In this document: in pieces, positions 1,143-64,000 of the stretch | Position numbering within the stretch: position 1 is the stretch's first letter | Layout: each line of letters opens with the position of its first letter | NCBI RefSeq assembly: GCF_022045235.1 | Contig: NW_027266275.1 | Coordinates: 28,644,001-28,708,000 of the forward strand | Origin: Haliotis cracherodii | Taxonomy: Eukaryota | Length of the DNA stretch: 64,000 bases | Direction of reading: 5' to 3' | Position numbers and translations under genes: made by a program | The notes under the pieces: model-generated | What the model was told of the DNA's origin: nothing | The model's database searches: none | What the model saw: the letters and a program-made list of their open reading frames with translations, nothing else

Positions 1143-1890
1143 AAAACCCAGAATATCAAACAGTCCGTCGCTTAAAATCATATACTCAACAAGATGATAT
1201 TCTGAAAAGCAGTTTTAACGTGTGAGATGTAGCATTGAAGACGCCCCTGTCCTGGAAGGCCTGTCATGTCAACAACACCAACAACGATGTGTGACTATGG
1301 CTGCTACCTGGGTTCACCACTTCCAGCTTGAGTCTTACCAATCAAAACAATGGAAACGTGTGACATCATCACCCCCAACGAAGACACATACTATCCCTTC
1401 AGCTGAAAGGGCTATGGCGTCCTTGGTCTGGGATGCCGAGGCTGTCATCCTAGTGGACTATCCTCCAAAGGGCCAATTTGATCGGAGCATATTATGCTGC
1501 ACAATTGACGCAATTACGGGAGGAAAGACTAAGAGACGTGGGAAGCTGAGAAAAGCTTCCATTACCATGGCTACAATCCACGAGTGTGGCTTTTGACTTC
1601 TCCAGAACCCACCTTATTCGCCTGATCTCGCTCCGTCAGCCTCCCATCTGTTCCCAAACGTTCAGAACGCTCTAAGGAACGAACTTCGCCTCTAACGATG
1701 GCATCATAGCAGCTGTGGAGAAATTTTTGGACAGCCATGAGAAGGACGTCTACGAATCTTGGATAAAACCCCTCAAACATCGTTGGCAACAGTGTATCAA
1801 TGTTAAAGAGGATTAGGTTGAAAAATACATCATTTTAATGTTTTCAGTTCAAGTCCTTCTATGTGAGGCTCAGAATGTATCCATCAGACT
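1140..1890 (+). mobile_element. Decayed mariner (Tc1/mariner) transposon, internally deleted and frameshifted
   Basis: Fragments SIEDAP..GRP, TWVHHF..QSKQW, MASLVWDAEAVILVDY, KRRGKL, PYSPDLAPS (~1611-1640) and HRWQQCINV..VEK match mariner transposase motifs across shifting frames. Confidence 0.88.
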
Positions 1891-2610
1891 GAACGAGCTA
1901 AACCATTAACATGTTGAAATAACAGTCGGAATTTCTCAATATAGTCATTCGCCCAACGTTTCATTAGGCAGGAAAGTTACGTTAAGTATGGTTTAATAAA
2001 TTATTGTTAGGCTTGAAAGTATTGGGTATGACTTGAATTAAGATAATTTAAAAGAAAATTCGGAATTTGTTAATGAAGTGACTTTTATTTATAAATTCAA
2101 CGTTTCTTTTGGCAGGAAAGTTATCAAATCCAAATTTGGTCATGGCTTGCATTAAAAATCGTCTGAATTGTAACACTTCAAAGTCTTAAATGATTTGAAT
2201 TGAGAGAATTTGTAAAGAAAGTTGGCATCCAGGATTCCATCAAACTCTTTTCCCATACACTGAATAGATCTGAAAATAACACTCATGTAAATGTGGCTTG
2301 AATTTGAATGTTTTGAAAAACATCTATTTTTTTAAGACATTGAGAATCTCACCTTCTTGTCTCCAAAAAAGTTTTGCCAAGAAGTTTTAAAATTGTATTG
2401 ACGACTGTTGATATATTTTGTTTTGTATCAAAAGACACAAAGGTGGGATTCTATTTATCATCCAAAATCATTCTGCCAACTTATTTAGTTTGTAAACAGT
2501 AATAATCAGTGTCTTCAGTGTAAAGTACAGCTAGAGATTAGTGATGTCATTTGTTCGACGTCATGGTAACCGATGACGTAACAATGGTCTGCTAAGCATT
2601 GCGATGCAAT
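1890..2610 (+). repeat. Local direct duplication, partner 4487-4937 plus 5665-5790; possibly a very decayed L1/Tx1-like LINE fragment
   Basis: Shared blocks cccaacgtttcat-aggcaggaaagttac, aggcttgaaagtattgggtatgact, tttatcatcc..ttgtaaacagtaat and gattagtgat..caatgg.ctgc.aagcattg. The LINE origin rests only on weak GLKVL and FCQEVLK peptides. Confidence 0.7.
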
Positions 2611-2632
2611 TTCTTTGCATGGTGTCTCATAG

Positions 2633-2800
2633 GAGTTAGTGAGTGAGTTAGGTTTAGCGCCGTTTTGAACAGTATTCACAGTATTTAGGTTGGAGGAAAG
2701 CACGAAGTGATGCAGGTATCAGACGTTTATCACTTTGGTAAAACCCATGAGCACGGGTAAATGCTAACATAATCGAGGCGAACCGGGATTCGCACCCACG
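2633..2800 (-). mobile_element. tRNA-derived SINE family C, partial
   Basis: Reverse complement matches 8391-8676 (cagacgttta.cactt, ggcgaaccgggattcg.accc); ACTC tail. Confidence 0.8.
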
Positions 2801-3297
2801 TTTCTCCTAGGAGATATCACTAGATCTCATCGAAGCTATATATCCCATGGAATCTAGTTTTTTAACCCACCCAGAAAGAATCGCGTTTACATTTTGATGA
2901 ATAGCCGCTGTTATCATCAGTTCTAAAGTCAAACCTCTGTGCATATGAATGTTATTATGAATGTGATATTGAATATATCTTTTATCTTGATAAGTTTGTA
3001 AGCGGACTTCTCCATTTAAATATTGTGATCTTTCTACCTCTGCAGCCTATGTAATGAGTGCACCTAATCAATGCACTGGGTGAACTCACAAATCTGGGCG
3101 GACGTGGCCTTGGGTAGCGAGTTTGGAATTTGTTTAAGGCTGAACAATGGCAAACCTGTTCATGGAACCAGTGTTTGTGTACTGGGGCCGCTAAAGAGGC
3201 TCTGAGATGTACGTCACGGGCTGAGAGAGACACGTGCCGAAAAGGACTAACTGATATAGTAGTGTTATTATAGAGTACTAACATTGCCGGGGTACCG

Positions 3298-7664: not shown

Positions 7665-7803
7665 NNNNNNNNNNNNNNNNNNNNNNNNNNNNNNNNNNNN
7701 NNNNNNNNNNNNNNNNNNNNNNNNNNNNNNNNNNNNNNNNNNNNNNNNNNNNNNNNNNNNNNNNNNNNNNNNNNNNNNNNNNNNNNNNNNNNNNNNNNNN
7801 NNN
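7665..7803. other. Assembly gap (N run)
   Basis: 139 N characters. Confidence 0.99.
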
Positions 7804-8390: not shown

Positions 8391-8676
8391 AGGGGCACGG
8401 GTGGCCCAGTCGTCTAAGGCGCCGCGATTCGCTGTGCAGAGTTGCGTCCCTTGGGCACGCCAGAAACCTATGATTGTGGGTTCGAATCCCGGTTCGCCCC
8501 AATTATCTTTCTAGGTTTGTCAGCACCATACCCGTGCTCGTTGGTTTCCCCGAAGTGGTAAACGTCTGAGACCTGCATCACTTCGGGCTTTCCTCCCACA
8601 TTAAGCTGACACGCCGTGATGTAACTGGAATACTGTTAAAAGCGGCGTTAAGTCCAACTCACTCACTCACTCACTC
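8391..8676 (+). mobile_element. tRNA-derived SINE family C, full length
   Basis: A-box TGGCCCAGTCG, B-box GGTTCGAATCC, body ending ..ggaatactgttaaaagcggcgttaa and a (ACTC)n tail. Confidence 0.9.
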
Positions 8677-8885
8677 TAATCACGAACACCATCAGACTTG
8701 GCGAATGTTCGTTGGACGCTTTCTGTACACCCTTGTCTACATCGTCAGGTGAAAAATCCCGAAACAAAACAACAAATAAACACTTTAACAACCTCAGTGA
8801 GATCGAATTGCATAGTCTTAATTTTATAAAATATATTTAATACTACCAGAGCAATGCTTCACATTAACATGACCTTAAATATGAC

Positions 8886-19276: not shown

Positions 19277-20195
19277 AGCCTTATCCCTGTGTTCTACAAG
19301 AGGAATACGTGGCACTGGCCCCAAGCCTTATCCCTGTGTTCTACAAGGGGAATACACGGCACTCGCACCAAGCCTTAACCCTTGTGTTCTACAAGGGGAA
19401 TACATGGCACTCGCACCAAGCCTTATCACTATGTTCTACAAGGGGAATACACGGCACTCGCACCAAGCCTTATCCCTGTGTTCTACAAGGGGAATACACG
19501 GCACTCGCACCAAGCCTTAACCCTTGTGTTCTACAAGGGGAATACATGGCACTCGCACCAAGCCTTATCCCTGTGTTCTACAAGGGGAATACACGGCACT
19601 CGCACCAAGCCTTAACCCTTGTGTTCTACAAGGGGAATACGTGGCACTCGCACCAAGCCTTATCCCTGTGTTCTACAAGGCGAATACACGGCACTCGCAC
19701 CAAGCCTTAACCCTTGTGTTCTACAAGGGGAATACGTGGCACTCGCACCAAGCCTTATCACTATGTTCTACAAGGCGAATACACGGCACTCGCACCAAGC
19801 CTTATCACTATGTTCTACAAGGGGAATACACGGCACTCGCACCAAGCCTTAACCCTTGTGTTCTACAAGGGGAATACACGGCACTCGCACCAAGCCTTAT
19901 CCTTGTGTTCTACAAGGGGAATACACGGCACTCGCACCAAGCCTTATCACTATGTTCTACAAGGGGAATACACGGCACTCGCACCAAGCCTTATCACTAT
20001 GTTCTACAAGGGGAATACACGGCACTCGCACCAAGCCTTATCCCTGTGTTCTACAAGGCGAATACACGGCACTCGCACCAAGCCTTAACCCTTGTGTTCT
20101 ACAAGGGGAATACGTGGCACTCGCACCAAGCCTTATCACTATGTTCTACAAGGGGAATACGTGGCACTCGCACCAAGCCTTATCACTATGTTCTT
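19277..20195. repeat. 47/48-bp minisatellite, about 19 units
   Basis: Unit AGCCTTATCCCTGTGTTCTACAAGGGGAATACACGGCACTCGCACCA with three recurring variants. Confidence 0.97.
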
Positions 20196-20559
20196 CACGA
20201 GTATGGTTCAGACAAGCCCAGATGAATATACAGGGGGAATCTGGGATTCAAACCTACGATCATAGATATCTTGCCCACCTAAGGGACGTAACTCTGCACA
20301 ACGAATTGCACCTAAGACGACTGTGCCAGCCGTGCCTCTCGAACCAGAGAAACATTTCATTGCTCTTTACCCTCAGATGTCATACACCTGTTTTTTTTTA
20401 GAGCTGAGAGGTTTCTAGAGTTCGCGTGGCTGCTGTTGTATGGTAGACTGCGCTCTGACGTTGGGATGTGTGTCGGTCATGTCTCTGAAAGGCTGGGTGG
20501 GGTCGAGTGGGATTTGTTGGGCTAGGGTGAAATAGTATCGAGGTAGAGTGGTGTGCTGT

Positions 20560-22700
20560 GTGGCGGTGGTCTTAGATAAGGTGGTGCCGGGTGGCTGTGT
20601 CGGATGGACTGGTGGTGGGTGAGGTGGAGGGGTGTTGGGTTGGCTTGTGCCGGCTGGTGTTGGCTGGTGTTGGGTGGGCTTGAGCCGGCTGGTGTTGGCT
20701 GTGGTTGAGTCGGGTTGTGTTGTATTGGGTGGGGCTGAGTCGGGTTGTGTTGGATGGGGTGGGGTTGTGTCGAGAGGGGTTGGATGGGGTGGGGTTGTGT
20801 CGAGAGGGGTTGGATGGGGTGGGGTTGAGTCGAGAGGGGTTGGATGGGGTGGGGTTGAGTCGAGAGGGGATGGATGGGGTGGAGTTGTGTCGAGAGGGGT
20901 TGGATGGGGTGGGGTTGAGTCGAGAGGGGTTGGATGGGGTGGGGTTGAGTCGAGAGGGGTTGGACGGGGTGTGGTTGAGTCGAGAGGGGTTGGATGGGGT
21001 TGTGTTGTGTCGAGAGGGGTTGGATGGGGTGGAGTTGTGTGGAGAGGGGTTGGATGGGGTGTGGTTGAGTCGAGAGGGGTTGGATGGGGTGTGGTTGAGT
21101 CGAGAGGGGTTGGATGGGGTTGTGTTGTGTCGAGAGGGGTTGGATGGGGTGTGGTTGAGTCGAGAAGGGTTGGATGGGGTGGAGTTGTGTCGAGAGGGGT
21201 TGGATGGGGTGGGGTTGAGTCGAGAGGGTTTGGATGTGGTGTGGTTGAGTCGAGAGGGGTTGGATGGGGTGGAGTTGTGTCGAGAGGGGTTGGATGGGGT
21301 GGGGTTGAGTCGAGAGGGGTTGGATGGGGTGGAGTTGTGTCGAGAGGGGTTGGGTGGGATGGAGTTGAGTGGAGAGGGGTTGGATGGGGTGGGGTTGAGT
21401 CGAGAGGGTTTGGATGTGTGTGGTTGAGTCGAGAGGGGTTGGATGGGGTGGAGTTGTGTCGAGAGGGGTTGGATGGGGTGGAGTTGTGTCGAGAGGGGTT
21501 GGATGGGGTGTGGTTGAGTCGAGAGGGGTTGGATGGGGTTGTGTTGTGTCGAGAGGGGTTGGATGTGGTGTGGTTGAGTCGAGAGGGGTTGGATGTGGTG
21601 TGGTTGAGTCGAGAGGGGTTGGATGGGGTGGAGTTGTGTCGAGAGGGGTTGGATGGGGTGGGGTTGAGTCGAGAGGGTTTGGATGTGTGTGGTTGAGTCG
21701 AGAGGGGTTGGATGGGGTGGAGTTGTGTCGAGAGGGGTTGGATGGGGTGGAGTTGTGTCGAGAGGGGTTGGATGGGGTGTGGTTGAGTCGAGAGGGGTTG
21801 GATGGGGTTGTGTTGTGTCGAGAGGGGTTGGATGTGGTGTGGTTGAGTCGAGAGGGGTTGGATGTGGTGTGGTTGAGTCGAGAAGGGTTGGATGGGGTGG
21901 AGTTGTGTGGAGAGGGGTTGGATGGGGTGGGGTTGAGTCGAGAGGGTTTGGATGTGTGTGGTTGAGTCGAGAGGGGTTGGATGGGGTGGAGTTGTGTCGA
22001 GAGGGGTTGGATGGGGTGCAGTTGTGTCGAGAGGGGTTGGATGGGGTGGGGTTGAGTCGAGAGGGGTTTGGATGTGGTGTGGTTGAGTCGAGAGGGGTTG
22101 GATGGGGTGGAGTTGTGTCGAGAGGGGTTGGATGTGGTGTGGTTGAGTCGAGAGGGGTTGGATGGGATGGAGTTGTGTCGAGAGGGGTTGGATGGGGTGG
22201 GGTTGAGTCGAGAGGGTTTGGATGTGTGTGGTTGAGTCGAGAGGGGTTGGATGGGGTGGAGTTGTGTCGAGAGGGGTTGGATGGGGTGGAGTTGTGTCGA
22301 GAGGGGTTGGATGGGGTGTGGTTGAGTCGAGAGGGGTTGGATGGGGTTGTGTTGTGTCGAGAGGGTTTGGATGTGTGTGGTTGAGTCGAGAGGGGTTGGA
22401 TGGGGTGGAGTTGTGTCGAGAGGGGTTGGATGGGGTGGGGTTGTGTCGAGAGGGGTTGGATGGGGTGGGGTTGTGTCGAGAGGGGTTGGATGGGGTGGGG
22501 TTGAGTCGAGAGGGGTTGGATGGGGTGGAGTTGAGTCGAGAGGGGTTGGATGGGGTGGGGTTGTGTCGAGAGGGGTTGGATGGGGTGGGGTTGAGTCGAG
22601 AGGGGTTGGATGGGGTGGAGTTGAGTCGAGAGGGGTTGGATGGGGAGGAGTTGTGTCGAGAGGGGTTGGATGGGTTTGGGTTGAGTCGGGTGTTGTTGGA
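20560..22700. repeat. G-rich 30-bp minisatellite (~65 units) with 269-bp higher-order structure
   Basis: Unit GTCGAGAGGGGTTGGATGGGGTGGGGTTGA; a 29-bp variant recurs at 21402, 21671, 21940 and 22210. Confidence 0.97.
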
Positions 22701-23282
22701 TGATTATGCTGATGCTATATAGAGGTTCCATGTTGCACTGACTTGACTTCCTACCTGTTCCCACTTTATGCTGTACAAATACATGGCGATGTAATCAAAT
22801 GGTCTGCTTGCTTTATCAAACCTGAACACCTTCAAAACATAACGTAGTGTTCTCCACATGCATCTGGAATGTTTACGTTCTAATTTGTCTATCAAAAACT
22901 GCAGAAGGAAACACACATGCTGTGTTCTTGTATTCCCGGGGTATATTCCCTTTTATTCTGCACAGGTTTCCTTTAATGGTAGAAGCACGTACTGGGTGGT
23001 CTTATTGGCGAAATGCATCATGGTAAAACACGGTTCCCTATAAACTTTATATATAGAAATTGGTATGTTCCGTTACGTAATGAAATCTTGAGCAATGGTT
23101 TTTCATATGTGAAGTTTAAATTTAACGAGATTAATGTTTACCAACAGGTTTTGGCAGTAGGTTACAATACAACCGATACTTTGAAACCCCGTAAGTTTGG
23201 ACCTCCTTATTCCGGAATATTCGCTTTACGGACGATATAGTTGGGTAATACACATGTATATGTTAACATAAATGTGTAAAAT

Positions 23283-27868: not shown

Positions 27869-28119
27869 ATGGGGAATAACTCACTAGACACTTCCCTCTC
27901 AAAAACAAGAAAACATTGATGCAGAGCATCAAAGTTCCCCGCCATATGTGATGCCTCACAAACGCATAATTATGATGTTACTGAAAGGCATGAAGGAACA
28001 TAATTTTATTAACCACAAATAAGAAAACACTGTTATGGAAAAACATATTATTTATTTTGAGTATTTGGCAATATAGTTGAAACATTTGCATAGGGTAGGT
28101 CTATTTAGAAACAGTTTTC

Positions 28120-28305
28120 TTGTTTAACGCCCACTCAGCCTTATTCCAGCTACTTGACGGTGGACTGTAAATAATCGATCTGGTGATTTACATCAAGAGC
28201 ATCGAACTATGCAATTGGAATATGATGTCATGCATCAACCAAATCGTTGATCCTGACTACCCAATCCTGTTCGTCGCATCTTACGGCAAGCATGGGTTGC
28301 TGAAG
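28120..28305 (-). mobile_element. SINE family B, decayed
   Basis: gtcgcatcttacggcaagcatgggttgctgaag and tail gtttaacgcc..ctcagc. Confidence 0.8.
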
Positions 28306-29544
28306 AAATAGTATCTTTGTACATGCACTGTGTAAAATTACCATTGTCCAAAACCAGTTTTATTCATCACTGGACTTAACAAATAATATTTACATAATTT
28401 GATAATAAGTATATCACTGTGAATATTCATATGGAATACTAACAACAGGTACTTTTTGCACAAACCTGAAACCACAAAAGACTAAAAGTCTTGAATTGAA
28501 TTATGCAAGTAAAATAAAATACAAAACTTATGAATTACATACTTTCATTATGACCATGATAATGCATATTCGAATGGAATTCAAAATTAAGGGATATGTG
28601 TGTTTTACAGGTTACGGTTGGTATATCTATTTCAAATACTAAATAATAGTCATCAACATAATGTATAGTTTATACTAGAAGCCTTTCTTAATTTGATAAT
28701 TACACAACAATTTATGCACATGCTTTCTTCAGTGCATAAAAAACCTCCTTCATAATTTAAAATATTTCTTTAATAATTAACAAATTTCATCATGGAAGAT
28801 CATTTACTTTATTAAAGGTGTGTGACAGAGTGAATATAACTAAATGTAATGCATATTTACTCTTGAGTTTTAAACATATGACTGGTTTATTAAGTACTAA
28901 AATTACTAAATAAATAATTAAATAGAATATACTAAAATTAATTTCACGTTTAAAAACATCTTCATTGCAAAGATTTTCCAAATTACATACTCCAAATCTT
29001 GCCTTATAATTTAATGCCTATTCAAATTGTCAAAGGCACGGCTTCCATGACACTGCTCATGCAGTCAGATACCAGCATACCATGGTAAGTTGGCTAAAGT
29101 GGCCTACCTATTAGTAGTTACATTCTCATAAATAATCTAACATCACAGAAACATGTAACACATCCTCCGTAATCTTAAAACACTGTCCACTGAGACTATA
29201 AATACACGTCTGAACGATAGTACCGCACTGGTTGTTAAAATTATTGTAAAGGTAAAAAAAAGGACACATACCATTACGAAGGGTCCTATGGTTGTCAGTT
29301 GTCAGTCAGGAGCCAATAAACCTTGCAGGAATAACAAATAACCGATCATATTATTCCGAAATAAATAAACTTTTACGAGTGTCAACAGAGGTGACAACCA
29401 GGCTCGGTAGTATACTTGGTCCCGTCTACAGAGTTAGCTTAGGCGGTCGCGCATTTCGAAAGCAGAACTAGTTCATGAGATGAGGCATGTCACCGGAAAT
29501 GCTGGTACCGGAAGTTGCGCTTCGAGAGTCTTACGAACCCTATT

Positions 29545-29876
29545 GACGTAAGGATTATGAGAAAATGTGGGAAATACCCACCTGTTCATAAAATGGACTT
29601 GTCCGACATTGCCGAGGAGGGAGTCATCATTATAAAAAAACGGGTAAATATTTTTAAAGCTTATAATCTAAGCTAATACAATTTATTATCATCCATAAAA
29701 GGCTGTACATAATGTTGATATTTCATATAAGAAGTAAACGACTCGTGGTTCTTTATCGTACAAAAAAAACTCGGCAGAGAGAATAAACCACTCGAGGCTG
29801 CGCCCCTCATGTTATATTCTCCCTAACGTATTTCATTGTACGATAAACAACTCCTACTCGTCATTTATTTCTTAAA
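29545..29876. mobile_element. Second copy of the hairpin-ended element (matches 5295-5664)
   Basis: Shared aaatggacttgtccgacattgccgagg and gagaataaaccactcg.ggctgcg..cgataaacaactcc.actcgt..tttatttcttaaa. Confidence 0.8.
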
Positions 29877-29889
29877 CATACCACAACCA

Positions 29890-30095
29890 CATGGCACGGA
29901 AATTCGCTGGTCAGAGTTCTGTCATTTAGGCGTGCCCCAAACTTCGAATCCCAAAATCGCCCTGATTATGTTTCAAGGTTTGTCAACACCATACCTGTGC
30001 TCCTACGGCGTGGCAAACGTCTAATCTACATCACTTTGGACTTTCCTCCTACAGCCGACACGCCTCGACAAAATTAAAATAAAACTCACTCACAA
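29890..30095 (+). mobile_element. Decayed SINE family C
   Basis: ttcgaatccc..gattatgtttcaaggtttgtcaacaccatacc..tttcctcc..actcactcac. Confidence 0.65.
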
Positions 30096-30852
30096 ATAAA
30101 CACGTTCGAAGACGCCGGATTCTTCCAAGATCAGCCTCTAATCAATTACGCTGCGCATGTTCGCAGTTCTTGTTGGGGTCACGGTCTGTTACCCACGTAT
30201 CTGCCTAGCAGTAGTAGGGCGCATAACTTCAGTAATAGAGATATTAAACATGACCCAAGTCAACAGTATCGGGCGAACGGGAGCCCAAGAGACCCGGAGA
30301 GATAGACACTGATGGCACAAGACAGTTGTGTCTGAGGTTTTAAGAAATATAATTCTACTTATTGTCGAGAATTGATGGATAGTTTCTCAACACCTGTTCA
30401 TAGCCGCTGAAACTCTTGTGTTGTGATTCACTTTGGAAAAGCGGCGAAATATGTTCTTGTATGTTTAAATTCACAATATCGTTTGATGTATAAAACCTGC
30501 CCTACGTGTGCTATGGGAGATGTTTCAGGTTTCCTGAGTCCACAGACGCTATAAGAACCCGACCACATGTAGGTCTAGCGACGGTATGTCGGAAACTGCT
30601 GCTGACAGATACAGAATTGCCGAAAAACAAGCAGTTTCTCTCATAAACACTCCTCTTGGTCGACTCGACTCCATGTCAACCAGTGCGCGTGTGGCGTCAG
30701 ACAAATTTCTTTGCCATCAGGTGTCATTAACACTGATAGTGTTTCTCATCGCGGAATCCTATACCACTACATGGCTATAGACACTTAAAGTAGACTACAG
30801 CACTTTAGATCACTATAGTGAGTGAGTGAGTGAGTGAGTGAGTGAGTTGGGT

Positions 30853-31004
30853 TTACTCCGTTTTGAAAAGTTGTCCAGTTATATCACTACGTGTCAGTTG
30901 GACTGGGAAAGACACAGACGGAGATGCTGTTACACTGGGCAGTGTCATGGCCTCCGTGGTCTTTGGTGTCGTCAGGGGTTCTGTAGCTGCACTTGGAGGC
31001 AAAT
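30853..31004 (-). pseudogene. Partial duplicate of the MRTF-like terminal exon (first 104 nt) with intact acceptor and SINE-derived stop; pseudo-exon or alternative last exon
   Basis: 30901-31004 matches 63765-63868 at 101/104 nt; weaker intron and SINE homology continues to ~31145 (=64000); acceptor cttttgtcttgactagcAG; frame stays open to TAA at 30853-30855. Confidence 0.85.
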
Positions 31005-31056
31005 CTGCTAGTCAAGACAAAAGTGGTACAAAATATCAGAAACTACATTCCTACTG

Positions 31057-31245
31057 TGAGTGAGTTGGGTTTGACAATTCTGAGAACAGTAGCCCTCGAT
31101 TGAACATAGAACAGTTATATCACAGTGTGTCTGCTTAATTTCAGAGGAAAGCCCGAAGTGAGGAAGGTCTCAGACGTTTACCATTTTGGTGACACGCCCG
31201 AGCATGGGCATGGTGCTGACAAACCTAGAAACATAACCGAGACTA
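31057..31245 (-). mobile_element. SINE family C (paralog of the intronic copy at 63927-64000)
   Basis: gaggaaagcccgaagtga..ggtctcagacgtttacca..tggtgctgacaaacctagaaa. Confidence 0.85.
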
Positions 31246-31749
31246 TAGACCTACTTGATGACAATATGCACAGGACTATAGACCTATTTGATGACAATAT
31301 GTGCAGGACTATAGACCTATTTGATGACAATATGTACAGGACTATAGACCTACTTGATAACAATATGTACAGGACTACAGACCTACTTGATGACAATATG
31401 TGCAGGATCTAAGACCTACTTGATGACAATATGTACAGGACTATAGACCTACTTGATAACATGTACAGGACTATAGACCTACTTGATGACAATATGTACA
31501 GGACTATAGACCTACTTGATGACAATATGTACAGGACTATAGACCTACTTGATGACAATATGTACAGGACTGTAGACCTACTTGATAACATGTACAGGAC
31601 TATAGACCTACTTGATAACATGTACAGGACTATAGACCTACTTGATGACAATATTTAGAGGACTATAGACCTACTTGATGACAATATGTACAGGACTATA
31701 GACCTACTTGATGACAATATGTACAGGACTATAGACCTACTTGATGACA
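31241..31749. repeat. 33/30-bp minisatellite, about 15 units
   Basis: Unit GACTATAGACCTACTTGATGACAATATGTACAG. Confidence 0.97.
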
Positions 31750-32089: not shown

Positions 32090-32280
32090 TCCAGTATCAG
32101 TTGACAGTCGAACTGAGAGGCGCATCGCGTAATTGCAACGATGCACCAGTCGACGTCATTGGACGACCGTAGGGGGCGCGACGTGACTGGGTGCAGAAGA
32201 CGACCAGGAAAACTCTACAGTTCCGTCTAGCAACGCGGGACGTGATCAGGAGCCACACCGGTACTACACTCCCTTGTCAG
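32090..32280. promoter_or_regulatory. CpG-rich promoter/insulator-like patch
   Basis: High CpG density; CTCF-like CCGTAGGGGGCGC (~32167), GACGTCA, and RFX-like CTAGCAAC (~32227). Confidence 0.35.
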
Positions 32281-33204: not shown

Positions 33205-33630
33205 TGAACACTTGGCTAACATGACGGATAACATACGTAACATTTGGCTGATGTGTCGGATACCATGCTTAACATTTGCCTGATGTGACGGATAACATAC
33301 GTAACATTTGGCTGATGTGACGGATAACGTACGTAACATTTGGCTGATATGACGGTAAACATACTAACATTTGGCTAACATGAGGGATAGCATACGTAAC
33401 ATTTGGCTGACATGACGGATAACATACGTAACATTTGGCTAACATGACGGATAACATACGTTACATTTGGCTAACATGACGGATAACATACGTAACATGA
33501 CGGATAACATACGTAACATTAATTTGGCTAACATGACGCATAACATACGTAACATTTGGTTGACATGAAGGAAAACATACGTAACAATTGGCTGACATTA
33601 CAGCAATTGGCTGACATTACGGTACGCATG
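33205..33630. repeat. 32-bp minisatellite, sub-array 1
   Basis: Unit CATTTGGCTAACATGACGGATAACATACGTAA. Confidence 0.93.
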
Positions 33631-34980
33631 GGTAACTGATGGCTTATATGACATCAAGCATGAGTAACTGATGGCAAACATGACATCAAGCATGAGTAAC
33701 TGATGGCTAACATGACATCAAGCATGGGTAACTGATGGCTAACAAGACATCAAGCATGAGTAACTGATGGCTAACATGACATCAAGCATGAGTAACTGAT
33801 GGCTAACATGACATCAAGCATGGGTAACTGATGGCTAATATGACATCAAATATAGGTAACTGATGGCTAACAAGACATCAAATATAGGTAACTGATGGCT
33901 AACAAGACATCAAGCATGAGTAACTGATGGATAACATGACATCAAGCATGGGTAACTGATGGCTAACAAGACATCAAGCATGAGTAACTGATGGCTAACA
34001 TGACATCAAGCATGAGTAACTGATGGCTAACATGACATCAAGCATGGGTAACAGATGGCTAATATGACATCAAGCATGGGTAACTGATGGCTAATATGAC
34101 ATCAAATATAGGTAACTGATGGCTAACAAGACATCAAATATAGGTAACTGATGGCTAACAAGACATCAAGCATGAGTAACTGATGGCTAATATGACATCA
34201 AACACGGGTAACTGATGGCTAACAAGACATCAAGCATGAGTAACTGATGGCTAATATGACATCAAACATGGGTAAATGATGGCTAATATGACATCAAACA
34301 TGGGTAACTGATGGCTAATATGACATCAAGCATGAGTAACTGATTGCTAACATGACATCAAGCATGAGTAACTGATGGCTAACATGACATCAAGCATGGG
34401 TAACTGATGGCTAACAAGACATCAAGCATAAGTAACTGATGGCTAATATGACATCAAACATGGGTAACTGATGGCTTATATGACATCAAACATGGGTAAC
34501 TGATGGCTAATATGACATCAAACATGGGTAACTGATGGCTAACAAGACATCAAGCATGAGTAACTGATGGCTAACATGACATCAAACATGGGTAACTGAT
34601 GGCTTATATGACATCAAACATGGGTAACTGATGGCTAATATGACATCAAACATGGGTAACTGATGGCTAACAAGACATCAAGCATGAGTAACTGATGGCT
34701 AACATATCATCAAGCATGAGTAACTGATGGCTAACATGACATCAAGCATGAGTAACTGATGGCTAACATGACATCAAGCATGGCTACCTGATGGCAAACA
34801 TGACATCAAGCATGAGTAACTGATGGCTAACATGACATCAAGCATGCGGAAACTGATGGATTACATGACATCAAGCATACGGAAACCGATGGCTAACATG
34901 ACATCAAGCATACGGAAACTGATGGCTAACATGACATCAAGCATACGGAAACTGATGGCTAACATGACATTTAGCATACA
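33631..34980. repeat. 32-bp minisatellite, sub-array 2 (~42 units)
   Basis: Unit AACTGATGGCTAACATGACATCAAGCATGAGT. Confidence 0.97.
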
Positions 34981-63074: not shown

Positions 63075-63868
63075 CTAACTTGAGCTTGGTTCGGCCAGTT
63101 TCTCCCAGTTCAAACCACAGTGAGAATCTGTAGGAGTGCTGAAGTCTGCTTCGTCAAAGTTAAACAGGTCTAACACTTCTTGTTGTGTCTTGGGAGTTAG
63201 GATGGGGTCGGATGAGAATGATACTGGGGCATTAGTGCTGAGTGGGGTCAGCCCAGTGCTCGGGACAATAACATCCAGCCAATCAGACACGTCTATCTGC
63301 ATGTTGCTGTTGGCATCAGTGTCATTCAGTCCAAGGGATGCCAAATCGGGCTCAGATCCGTGAGTGCTGCCTGATTTTTGAGCACAACTAGTAGGCACAC
63401 TGAGGAGACCGGTGTCACTGTTGGTCAACCTTGTGTCCAGAGAGACTGGCGTCGGGTCTGTCAAATCCAGACCAGAGAAATGATGGTCACTTGTCCAATC
63501 CATTCCCCCTAATTCGCCAGCAGACAACATTTCTGTGAGATCAAGCAGTTCTGTGTTGGTGTCTGCTGGGCAGGGTGGCAGAGGGGAACTCACAACTACC
63601 GGGGCAACCAAATCGGGCACTTCTTTCTTAATGTTCTTTACCACGCAAATTGGCACATCATGGGCAGATCCCAAGGAGTTGACAGTCACAGTGTTTGTGG
63701 CAGTGTTTGACATGATGACATCTGCTTTAGAGAACATCAAGCCGCCACAGCTCTGTGCTGAGTTGACTGGGAGAGACACAGACGGAGATGCTGTTACACT
63801 GGGCAGTGTCATGGCCTCCGTGGTCTTTGGCGTCGTCAGGGGTTCTGTAGCTGCACTTGGAGGCAGAT
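63075..63868 (-). CDS. MRTF: Terminal coding exon of a probable myocardin-related transcription factor (MRTF/MKL-like); upstream exons lie beyond the window
   Basis: ~264-codon open frame after acceptor ttgattgttgcAG (phase 1). The acidic S/T/P-rich tail DVSDWLDVIVPSTGLTPLSTNAPVSFSSD..LNW resembles the MRTF-A/myocardin C-terminal motif MDWLEL..LAPLSTTAPSLFSTD..LHW (compared from memory, not searched). Confidence 0.7.
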
Positions 63869-63926
63869 CTGCAACAATCAAAGCAAATATGGTACCAATA
63901 ATCAGAAACTTTATGACATTCCTTAA

Positions 63927-64000
63927 GTGAGTGAGTTGGGATCAACACTTCTGAGAACAGTATTCCAGTTATATCCTGAGTGTGTTTGCTTAAGTTAGGA
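63927..64000 (-). mobile_element. Intronic SINE family C, 3' end
   Basis: gtgagtgagttggg..aacagtattccagttatatc..gtgtgt..gcttaa. Confidence 0.7.

What the first reader, a model, noticed from the sequence alone, without database searches (positions are those of the whole stretch)
30817..31245. Duplicated MRTF-like last-exon start with intact acceptor and SINE-supplied stop: candidate alternative terminal exon lacking the activation domain
Seen: 30901-31004 copies 63765-63868 at 101/104 nt on the same strand, 32.9 kb downstream. Two of the three changes are synonymous, while the adjoining intron copy is much more diverged and has indels. It still keeps a pyrimidine tract and AG. The frame reads DLPPSAATEPLTTPKTTEAMTLPSVTASPSVSFPV, then QLTRSDITGQLFKTE-stop inside a SINE C tail fragment. 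Known: myocardin/MRTF proteins lacking the C-terminal activation domain act as dominant negatives on SRF. Inference: splicing here would give a ~50-aa tail instead of ~264 aa. The SINE / intron end / exon start / SINE-tail layout suggests SINE 3' transduction or SINE-SINE recombination.
Basis: partly seen in the sequence, partly recalled or inferred. Interest (0 to 1): 0.78.

Follow-up and report, generated by a model that had tools for sequence, protein, structure and literature searches.

The report
Dead retro-copied fragment of MRTF exon
A short piece of a muscle-gene regulator's last exon was copied long ago, together with its intron end and a SINE, to a spot about 30 kb past the gene's end, and nothing seen so far shows that it is used as an exon.

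Summary
Window 30901-31004 matches 63765-63868 at 101/104, and these are the only two copies in the 1.18-Gb genome. The parent is a minus-strand RPEL+SAP (MRTF-like) gene.

The copy lies about 33 kb downstream of the gene's own last exon and stop, not inside the gene. Its anatomy is a roughly 424-bp insert flanked by a 7-bp direct repeat. In gene sense it reads: 5'-truncated SINE, 51-nt intron end, 109 nt of exon, then the last ~78 nt of another SINE with its (ACTC)n tail. This fits a chimeric retro-insert, made when reverse transcription started on a SINE RNA and switched onto unspliced MRTF pre-mRNA.

The event is old. The flanks are about 21-23% diverged from the parent, and two related species carry the copy.

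In two probable RNA runs, the only contig touching the exon part carries the parent's letter and the canonical splice. No RNA contig covers 30109-30774 just downstream, apart from one bin in one run.

The exon part is about three times more similar to the parent than copy-lineage drift predicts (p about 0.004-0.03). Synonymous sites are also too similar, so I favour later gene conversion over selection. Use as an alternative terminal exon is unsupported but not excluded.

The parts
30812..30818 (.). Left copy of the 7-bp direct repeat ACTATAG (putative target-site duplication). Its last 1-2 letters overlap the SINE tail repeat.
   Evidence: Read directly. The same heptamer abuts the other end of the insert at 31242-31248. 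The chance of this is about 3e-4, or 5e-3 if only 5 nt count. The flank 30560-30816 is single-copy in the genome.
30819..30895 (-). SINE-L: the last ~78 nt of a SINE with its (ACTC)n tail, in gene sense directly after the exon copy. It supplies 15 codons and the stop at 30853-30855.
   Evidence: It matches the SINE copy at 8606-8683 at 82% over 78 nt. It aligns to the 3' end of the majority consensus. TRF finds the 4-nt repeat at 30817-30847.
30896..31004 (-). Copy of the first 108 nt of the MRTF-like last exon (109 nt here, with a 1-nt insertion near 30900).
   Evidence: 101 of 104 identical over 30901-31004. Alignments. Only two places in the genome.
31005..31055 (-). Copy of the 3' end of the parent's last intron, with acceptor TAGCAG and a pyrimidine-rich tract.
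   Evidence: Aligns to 63869-63927 with 11 of 51 mismatches plus 5-nt and 2-nt indels.
31056..31241 (-). SINE-R: a 5'-truncated SINE, sister of the SINE inside the parent's intron. It carries a private 20-nt insertion at 31092-31111.
   Evidence: A 32-nt pattern across its 3' region occurs with 0 mismatches only here and at the parent in 1.18 Gb, and the reversed-pattern control gave 0. Three-way comparison with the consensus over 177 sites: 14 shared derived, 17 private to the copy, 18 private to the parent, 5 where all differ.
31242..31248 (.). Right copy of the direct repeat ACTATAG. It is the first letters of the minisatellite.
   Evidence: Similarity to the SINE consensus ends at about 31241.
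31241..31749 (.). 33-bp minisatellite (15.7 units, 92% matches) flanking the insert. It is not part of the copied segment.
   Evidence: TRF. It matches only itself in the genome. The left flank has a weak match to the unit, reached by 8 of 500 shuffles. There is no significant similarity to the parent's donor or penultimate exon, since 441 of 1000 shuffles reach the score.
63075..63868 (-). Parent: the coding part of the true last exon of the MRTF-like gene (264 aa, stop at 63075-63077). 63761-63868 is the source of the copy.
   Evidence: ORF. Acceptor and phase read. SAP domain (E 5.1e-12) and RPEL repeats lie in upstream exons beyond the window end.
63869..64000 (-). Parent intron, about 237 nt, running on to about 64105 outside the window. 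It has a 59-nt unique 3' piece (63869-63927), then a 5'-truncated SINE in gene sense.

Best explanation
The feature is an old, roughly 424-bp chimeric retro-insert (30819-31241), not a working exon.

**Proposed origin (inferred).** A LINE-type reverse transcriptase started on the (ACTC)n tail of a SINE RNA at a nick in single-copy DNA and copied about 78 nt. It then switched template onto unspliced MRTF pre-mRNA at nt 108 of the last exon. It ran back through the exon start, the intron's last 59 nt and the SINE in that intron. It stopped before the intron's 5' end, leaving a 7-bp target-site duplication.

**Shown.** The part order, the sisterhood of the two SINEs, the direct repeat, the age, and the presence of the copy in two other species.

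**Inferred.** The RNA intermediate and the template switch.

**Later history.** The copy sits about 33 kb past the gene's own terminal exon, and no RNA contig here supports its use. The exon part is more similar to the parent than the flanks. Half of that is because the parent exon is constrained. The rest is most likely later non-allelic gene conversion from the parent, which lies 33 kb away in the same orientation. That step is inferred.
For: **Layout**
- The true SINE orientation is the gene's strand, with tail (ACTC)n.
- The direct repeat ACTATAG abuts both ends (chance about 3e-4).
- The left flank and the minisatellite are unique to this locus.
- Homology to the parent stops inside the SINE and does not reach the donor or penultimate exon (441 of 1000 shuffles reach the score).
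- Homology also stops at the exon/SINE-L junction.

**The SINE was copied with the exon**
- A 32-nt variant pattern has 0-mismatch matches only at the copy and the parent (2 of 7 matches at up to 2 mismatches; control 0).
- 14 shared derived sites out of 177.

**Old, and not error-prone copying**
- Private changes are split 17 (copy) against 18 (parent), and parent-copy divergence is 40 of 177.
- The unique intron piece differs at 11 of 51.

**Real, and older than the species split**
- A contig of organism B spans 30856-31170. A contig of organism E spans 30901-31161. Both have T at 30967.
- Flank divergence is 27 of 898 (A-B) and 13 of 686 (A-E).

**No sign of use**
- In X22 and X23 the only contig on the exon part (5840 and 5830 nt) lies on 30901-31006, has C at 30967 and 3-4 other letters. 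It leaves the genome at the acceptor, whereas B's genomic parent contig aligns on to 31091.
- RNA-contig depth is 0 on 30109-30774, except 18.1 in one bin of X22.
- No short predicted protein shares words with the 49-aa product.

**Conversion rather than selection**
- 2 synonymous differences were seen against about 6.3 expected (P 0.05).

**Precedent**
- Chimeric retrocopies made by template jumps are described in PMC2104539 and bioRxiv 10.1101/2025.02.02.635956 (abstracts in the listing).
Against: - The direct repeat is short, and 1-2 of its letters could belong to the tail repeat. With only 5 nt counted, chance is about 5e-3.
- No partner LINE was identified.
- The exon part has 3 changes where copy-lineage drift predicts about 8-12. 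One-sided Fisher p is 0.026 to 0.004, and Poisson P is 0.034 to 0.0016. A purely neutral dead copy without conversion is therefore disfavoured, and selection is not excluded.
- The high-identity tract ends within about 4 nt of the exon/intron boundary. Plain DNA gene conversion does not predict that.
- The RNA evidence is weak. It rests on Logan contigs of two small runs from one study, labelled RNA only as a guess. Contigs drop rare isoforms, so this is no proof of absence.
- The positions of the private differences in the copies of B and E were not shown (228 rows hidden), so constraint across species could not be tested.
- In organism E, 230 nt of the 495-nt contig did not align, so the SINE-L junction is confirmed only in B.
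Confidence: 0.68

Rival explanations
1. One reading: a used distal alternative terminal exon. Transcripts skip the canonical last exon and its poly(A) site and splice from the penultimate exon to 31004. This gives an MRTF with a roughly 50-aa tail and no activation domain, a natural dominant negative on SRF, kept by purifying selection.
For: - Acceptor AG and pyrimidine tract are kept, and the frame is open for 34+15 codons to a stop.
- The exon part has fewer changes than copy-lineage drift predicts (p 0.004-0.026).
- The identity tract ends at the exon boundary.
- The copy has been retained in three species.
- C-terminally truncated MAL/MRTF acts as a dominant negative (passages read in PMC2848193).
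Against: - The copy is about 33 kb downstream of the canonical last exon. That exon follows a 237-nt intron and is itself spliced in the RNA contigs.
- No RNA contig carries the copy's letters, and depth on 30109-30774 is 0 except one bin of X22.
- The nearest AATAAA/ATTAAA is 983 nt past the stop.
- Synonymous sites are also too similar (2 seen, 6.3 expected).
- No predicted protein shares words with the product.
- A second AG 3 nt upstream (TAGCAG) and indels have altered the acceptor region.
Confidence: 0.06
2. A DNA-level origin. A double-strand break in or near a SINE was repaired by copying from the parent locus 33 kb away, using SINE homology for invasion. Alternatively a small segmental duplication occurred. 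In either case SINE-L joined by microhomology or was inserted later, and no RNA intermediate was involved.
For: - The two loci are linked and in the same orientation, and one end of the homology lies inside SINE sequence.
- Intron sequence is present, as expected for a DNA source.
- The direct repeat is short.
Against: - The insert ends in a SINE 3' fragment with its microsatellite tail directly on the flank, and it is bounded by a direct repeat. Those are hallmarks of target-primed reverse transcription.
- Homology to the parent does not continue beyond SINE-L.
- The rest of SINE-L is not found beyond the array.
Confidence: 0.15
3. The exon part is kept similar for some other reason than coding. 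Examples are a regulatory DNA element, part of an unrelated non-coding transcript, or repair templated by spliced MRTF mRNA, which would stop exactly at the exon edge.
For: - The identity tract is bounded by the exon edge within about 4 nt.
- Similarity is in excess at synonymous sites too.
Against: - No locus-specific RNA contig was seen in 28000-31300.
- The statistical excess is moderate.
Confidence: 0.08
4. The duplication is an assembly artefact.
For: None found.
Against: - Contigs from two other species carry the copy with the copy-specific T at 30967. The contig of organism B spans both junctions, and the contig of organism E contains the 20-nt private insertion without gaps.
- Nine DNA runs of organism A from three studies hold 0.46-0.85 of the sampled words of 29500-31240.
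Confidence: 0.01

Closest known systems
Chimeric retrocopies made by LINE reverse-transcriptase template switching (U6/L1 and other L1-RNA chimeras in mammals; bi- and tripartite chimeric pseudogenes in Magnaporthe, PMC2104539; bioRxiv 10.1101/2025.02.02.635956)
   Same: - The 3' module is a retroelement 3' end with its tail, and the 5' module is copied from an unrelated cellular RNA.
- The two are fused head to tail in the same orientation.
- The whole is flanked by a short direct repeat and is 5'-truncated.
   Different: - The 3' module here is a SINE rather than a LINE.
- The 5' module is unspliced pre-mRNA, carrying an intron end and an intronic SINE.
- The host is an invertebrate-like genome with (ACTC)n-tailed SINEs.
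- The RNA route is inferred, not shown.
- I saw these papers only as titles and abstracts in the listing.
SINE/LINE 3' transduction
   Same: Unique sequence lying 3' of a SINE tail in the source locus has been moved together with that SINE.
   Different: - The source SINE is 5'-truncated and shows no promoter part.
- The moved segment ends in a second SINE 3' fragment that is absent from the source locus. Read-through alone cannot produce that.
Alternative last exons, and engineered C-terminally truncated MAL/MRTF dominant negatives (PMC2848193)
   Same: If spliced, the product would keep the RPEL, SAP and other upstream parts and lose most of the C-terminal 264 aa, like the engineered deltaC constructs.
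   Different: - No transcript was seen.
- The candidate lies beyond the gene's own terminal exon.
- The published dominant negatives are laboratory constructs, not natural isoforms.
Exon-restricted non-allelic gene conversion between linked duplicates
   Same: Linked, same-orientation copies have a high-identity tract over coding sequence and diverged flanks. Synonymous sites are homogenised too.
   Different: The homologous tract is only about 109 nt, and one partner is a fragment. Conversion is inferred from the divergence pattern alone.

Membership tests
Myocardin/MRTF family (the parent gene) | N-terminal RPEL repeats | tested here: met
   Two RPEL matches above the Pfam cut-off lie on the same contig and strand, 7.6 and 10.8 kb beyond the window end. 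RPEL scores 27 bits in L009:7528-7800(-).
Myocardin/MRTF family (the parent gene) | SAP domain between a Q-rich region and a coiled coil | tested here: met
   SAP has E 5.1e-12 at residues 267-301 of the 677-aa exon L009:1778-3811(-). Q-rich runs are visible in that ORF. The coiled coil was not tested.
Myocardin/MRTF family (the parent gene) | C-terminal transactivation domain encoded by the last exon | tested here: inconclusive
   Pfam gives no family for the 264-aa last-exon product. My assignment as an activation domain rests on position and on recalled resemblance of motifs, not on a test.
Alternative terminal exon of the MRTF-like gene | Acceptor site, open frame, in-frame stop | tested here: met
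   TAGCAG acceptor with a pyrimidine-rich tract, then 34 exon codons plus 15 SINE codons and a stop at 30853-30855.
Alternative terminal exon of the MRTF-like gene | Lies within the transcribed unit, upstream of or competing with the canonical poly(A) site | tested here: not met
   It lies about 33 kb downstream of the canonical last exon and stop. The mRNA contigs carry about 2.77 kb beyond the first 104 nt of the last exon. By my inference they therefore end near window 61,000.
Alternative terminal exon of the MRTF-like gene | Spliced transcripts using the acceptor | tested here: not met
   In 2 of 2 probable RNA runs, the only contig on the exon part has the parent's letter at 30967 and the canonical junction. 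These are contigs only, so a rare isoform is not excluded.
Alternative terminal exon of the MRTF-like gene | Poly(A) signal shortly after the stop | tested here: inconclusive
   The nearest AATAAA is 983 nt after the stop. The parent itself has no canonical hexamer within 4.5 kb of its stop, so the hexamer is a poor guide in this genome.
Chimeric retrocopy by template switching | 3' module is a retroelement 3' end with its tail, abutting the flank | tested here: met
   SINE-L is the last ~78 nt of the SINE plus (ACTC)n, directly next to single-copy flank.
Chimeric retrocopy by template switching | Target-site duplication around the whole chimera | tested here: met
   ACTATAG occurs at 30812-30818 and 31242-31248, abutting both ends. 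It is short and partly overlaps the tail repeat.
Chimeric retrocopy by template switching | 5' module copied from a different RNA, in the same orientation, with an abrupt junction | tested here: met
   The exon, intron and SINE segment derives from the MRTF locus. The junction at 30895/30896 shows at most 2 nt of microhomology, by my reading.
Chimeric retrocopy by template switching | An RNA intermediate and a partner LINE | not testable with these tools
   No partner LINE was sought or found. The intron content means the template would have been pre-mRNA, which cannot be told from DNA by sequence alone.
SINE 3' transduction | A source SINE able to be transcribed, with the transduced flank ending in a new tail of its own | tested here: not met
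   The parent's intronic SINE is 5'-truncated and lacks the head part of the consensus. The moved segment ends in a second SINE fragment that is absent from the parent.

The most novel reading that the evidence does not exclude
The fragment is a working distal alternative last exon. A retro-inserted piece of MRTF pre-mRNA, with its own acceptor and a SINE-supplied stop, would give a natural activation-domain-less MRTF that damps SRF signalling. It would have been kept by selection since before the split of at least three species.

A second unexcluded novelty is that the exon-exact identity tract was written by repair templated on spliced MRTF mRNA.
Probability: 0.06. Interest if true: 0.7.

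Novelty: new member of a known kind. Interest (0 to 1): 0.25.

Why it matters
If the majority reading holds, this is a well-delimited example in a non-mammalian genome of a SINE-primed chimeric retro-insert that captured unspliced pre-mRNA.

It is useful for two things. It is evidence that the local LINE/SINE machinery switches templates. It is also a caution that comparing exon with intron divergence overstates constraint on a copy when the parent exon is itself constrained.

It has no shown consequence for the MRTF-SRF pathway. Only if transcripts using the acceptor were found would it bear on natural dominant-negative regulation of SRF.

Tried and rejected
1. **Homology running on through the parent's donor into the penultimate exon, with the minisatellite derived from it.** The only shared piece is a 7-mer, and 441 of 1000 shuffles reach its score. 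Rejected.

2. **Insertion into a pre-existing SINE whose remainder follows the array.** No SINE sequence follows 31749. Rejected.

3. **A 200-nt patch inside one SINE with a 22-nt duplicated SINE segment.** SINE-R is colinear with the parent's SINE over its whole length and shares a variant unique in the genome. Rejected.

4. **Error-prone copying as the cause of the diverged flanks.** Private changes are split 17 against 18 between copy and parent. Rejected.

5. **SINE-R as an independent family member.** Its body is 87-90% like many copies, and the parent is not among the 40 scored hits. That alone could not decide the matter. The shared derived pattern decided it.

6. **Assembly artefact.** Rejected.

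7. **Search for short predicted proteins like the 49-aa product.** No candidates. This is a weak negative, because only proteins of 0.55-1.75 times the query length are seen.

8. **ARAGORN on a young SINE copy (L013).** It found no tRNA. The tRNA-like head is my reading of box-like motifs, not a test result.

9. **Earlier findings of the scan.** Two notes on this window concern other places, and the word searches gave nothing.

10. **Pfam on 8 further ORFs of the window.** Three, at 1222-1596, 52348-52821 and 52454-52888, matched transposase or HTH families. The other five matched nothing. I saw no gene between the copy and the parent, but short exons would be missed.

11. **Constraint across species.** It could not be tested.

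12. **Supplementary files of papers.** None were asked for and none bear on the claims.

13. **A joined spliced model (penultimate exon plus copy exon).** It was not built or searched. The copy's product was searched alone.
Full report
**1. The observation**

Window 30901-31004 and 63765-63868 are identical at 101 of 104 letters. The differences are at 30909, 30967 and 31002. With gaps, the similarity runs 30896-31091 against 63761-63962 at 86.7% over 203 columns. A search of the whole 1.18-Gb assembly with 30896-31050 scored two places only, the copy and the parent.

**2. The parent gene**

- The parent segment opens a 264-aa reading frame on the minus strand, 63868 down to the stop at 63075-63077.
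- Pfam finds nothing in that last-exon product.
- Upstream exons beyond the window end carry RPEL repeats and a SAP domain, E 5.1e-12, inside a Q-rich 677-aa exon. The gene is therefore MRTF/myocardin-like.
- The penultimate exon ends about 105 nt beyond the window end, so the last intron is only about 237 nt.

Because the gene is on the minus strand, the copy lies downstream of the gene's own terminal exon and stop, by about 33 kb.

**3. Anatomy of the copy**

The repeated element around both loci is an abundant SINE:
- 1573 and 3232 first-look candidates were found, of which 40 were scored each time.
- A majority consensus of 30 copies shows that its true orientation is the gene's strand. 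It has a GC-rich head and an (ACTC)n tail.
- The head is tRNA-like by my reading. ARAGORN called no tRNA in a young copy.

In gene sense the copy reads as follows:
- the 33-bp minisatellite (31749-31241)
- ACTATAG (31248-31242)
- a 5'-truncated SINE, "SINE-R" (31241-31056, with a private 20-nt insertion at 31092-31111)
- 51 nt of intron end (31055-31005)
- 109 nt of exon (31004-30896)
- the last ~78 nt of a SINE with its tail, "SINE-L" (30895-30819)
- ACTATAG (30818-30812)
- single-copy flank

The parent has the same order, SINE then 59 nt of intron then exon, but nothing like SINE-L. Homology to the parent does not reach the donor or the penultimate exon, since 441 of 1000 shuffles reach the score. 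The rest of SINE-L is not found beyond the array.

**4. The SINE was copied along with the exon**

- A 32-nt pattern across the 3' part of SINE-R has 0-mismatch matches at only two places in the genome, the copy and the parent. Five more places match with 2 mismatches, and the reversed control gives none.
- A three-way comparison with the consensus over 177 sites gives 123 unchanged, 14 shared by copy and parent against the consensus, 17 private to the copy, 18 private to the parent, and 5 where all differ.

So the two SINEs are sisters. The even split of private changes rules out error-prone copying as the source of the flank divergence.

**5. Age**

- Copy and parent differ at 40 of 177 SINE sites, and at 33 of 156 outside CpG.
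- They differ at 11 of 51 letters of the unique intron piece, plus two indels.
- That is about 10% per lineage.
- Contigs of two related species carry the copy. Organism B's contig covers 30856-31170 with 12 differences and 11 gap letters. Organism E's covers 30901-31161 with 9 differences and no gaps. Both have the copy's T at 30967.
- In the single-copy flank, those species differ from the window at 27 of 898 and 13 of 686 letters.

The event therefore predates their split several-fold. It is not an assembly artefact. In addition, nine DNA runs of the same species from three studies hold 0.46-0.85 of the sampled words.

**6. How it most likely arose**

Three features are the marks of target-primed reverse transcription:
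- a retroelement 3' end with its tail set directly on the flank
- a short direct repeat round the whole insert (chance about 3e-4, or 5e-3 if only 5 nt count)
- 5' truncation

The part order fits synthesis that began on a SINE RNA, copied about 78 nt, and jumped to unspliced MRTF pre-mRNA at nt 108 of the last exon. It then continued back through the intron end and the intronic SINE. By my reading, the junction has at most 2 nt of microhomology.

Chimeric retrocopies of this kind are described in PMC2104539 and bioRxiv 10.1101/2025.02.02.635956. I saw those only as abstracts in the listing.

A DNA-level repair or duplication route remains possible, and I put it at about 0.15.

**7. Is it used as an exon?**

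- The acceptor survives as TAGCAG behind a pyrimidine-rich tract.
- The frame runs through 34 exon codons and 15 SINE codons to a stop.
- In the two probable RNA runs, exactly one long contig each (5840 and 5830 nt) touches the exon part. It lies on 30901-31006 only and carries C at 30967, the parent's letter, with 3-4 other letters.
- That contig leaves the genome at the acceptor, whereas organism B's genomic parent contig aligns on to 31091. It is therefore the canonically spliced MRTF mRNA.
- The contigs extend about 2.77 kb beyond the first 104 nt of the last exon. By my inference they end near window 61,000, about 30 kb short of the copy.
- RNA-contig depth is zero over 30109-30774, except 18.1 in one bin of one run.
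- The nearest AATAAA after the copy's stop is 983 nt away.
- No short predicted protein shares words with the 49-aa product.

These negatives are weak. They come from contigs, two small runs and one study, with the RNA label itself a guess.

**8. The uneven divergence**

- Exon 3 of 104 against SINE 40 of 177 gives Fisher p 2e-6. Against the unique intron piece, 11 of 51, it gives p 3e-4.
- The parent exon is constrained, however, so the fair null is drift in the copy lineage alone.
- That null predicts 17-22 changes per 177 sites, or about 8-12 changes in 104 nt, against at most 3 seen. One-sided Fisher p is 0.026 to 0.004, and Poisson P is 0.034 to 0.0016.
- The excess similarity is therefore real but moderate.
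- Protein-level selection would leave synonymous sites free in both lineages. Two synonymous differences are seen where about 6.3 are expected from 30 synonymous sites (P 0.05).
- All three differences are transitions, by my reading of the letters listed, and one is at a CpG. The 30967 difference is shared by three species.

I read this as a later homogenisation of the exon part by non-allelic gene conversion from the parent, before the species split. What speaks against simple conversion is that the tract ends within about 4 nt of the exon edge. Selection, or repair templated on spliced mRNA, would explain that and is not excluded.

**9. Comparison with what is known**

The parent passes the tested MRTF features: RPEL and SAP are met, and the activation domain is not testable by Pfam.

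The copy fails two defining features of an alternative terminal exon: a place within the transcription unit, and spliced transcripts.

It meets the three testable features of a template-switch chimeric retrocopy. Those are the tailed 3' module, the target-site duplication, and a foreign 5' module in the same orientation.

C-terminally truncated MAL/MRTF does act as a dominant negative in engineered constructs (passages read in PMC2848193).

**10. Verdict**

This is a new member of a known kind, a chimeric retro-insert or pseudo-exon. Interest is low to moderate. The exon-exact identity tract is the one feature that keeps a small probability, about 0.06, on the functional reading.

Noticed in passing
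window 63869-64000 and L002:1741-1850: The last intron of the MRTF-like gene is only about 237 nt. Most of it is a 5'-truncated SINE in gene sense, whose tail ends 59 nt before the acceptor.
   Followed up: partly
window 31241-31749: A 33-bp minisatellite (15.7 units, 92% matches) matches only itself in the 1.18-Gb genome. The single-copy flank on the other side of the insert has a weak match to its unit (8 of 500 shuffles reach it). The array may therefore have grown from the target site after the insertion.
   Followed up: partly
window 30901-31161 (organism E, record 16): The 495-nt contig of organism E aligns only over 261 nt, starting exactly at 30901. The other 230 nt lie on nothing shown. 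Whether E has the same SINE-L junction is open.
   Followed up: no
window 33207-34977: Two further 32-bp minisatellites lie at 33207-33598 and 33626-34977. The second has 42 units at 91% matches.
   Followed up: no
window 19309-22764: A large block of tandem repeats gives long open frames on both strands, for example a 730-aa frame of Pro/Ser/Thr-rich repeats at 20572-22764 on the minus strand. It looks like a satellite rather than a gene.
   Followed up: no
window 52348-52888 and 1222-1596: Remnants of Tc1/mariner-type transposases: HTH_Tnp_Tc3_2 and HTH_38 at 52348-52888 (minus), and a partial DDE (Transposase_1) at 1222-1596.
   Followed up: partly
window 8503-8683 (minus on the + strand numbering) and genome-wide: A young subfamily of the same SINE has copies 94-97% identical to this one on many contigs. 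The family has at least 1573-3232 first-look candidates. It has an (ACTC)n tail and a GC-rich head with box-like motifs, but ARAGORN calls no tRNA.
   Followed up: partly
L009:4895-6122: Another minisatellite with long open frames on both strands sits inside an intron of the MRTF-like gene.
   Followed up: no
G000:C34:70405587-70437733: A second cluster of four RPEL matches lies on another contig. It is probably a different RPEL protein, Phactr-like by my guess.
   Followed up: no
window 7665-7803: A run of 139 N, either an assembly gap or masked. I left it alone.
   Followed up: no
window 32100-32270: A CpG-rich stretch lies about 1.1 kb from the copy, on the side that is upstream in gene sense.
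   Followed up: no
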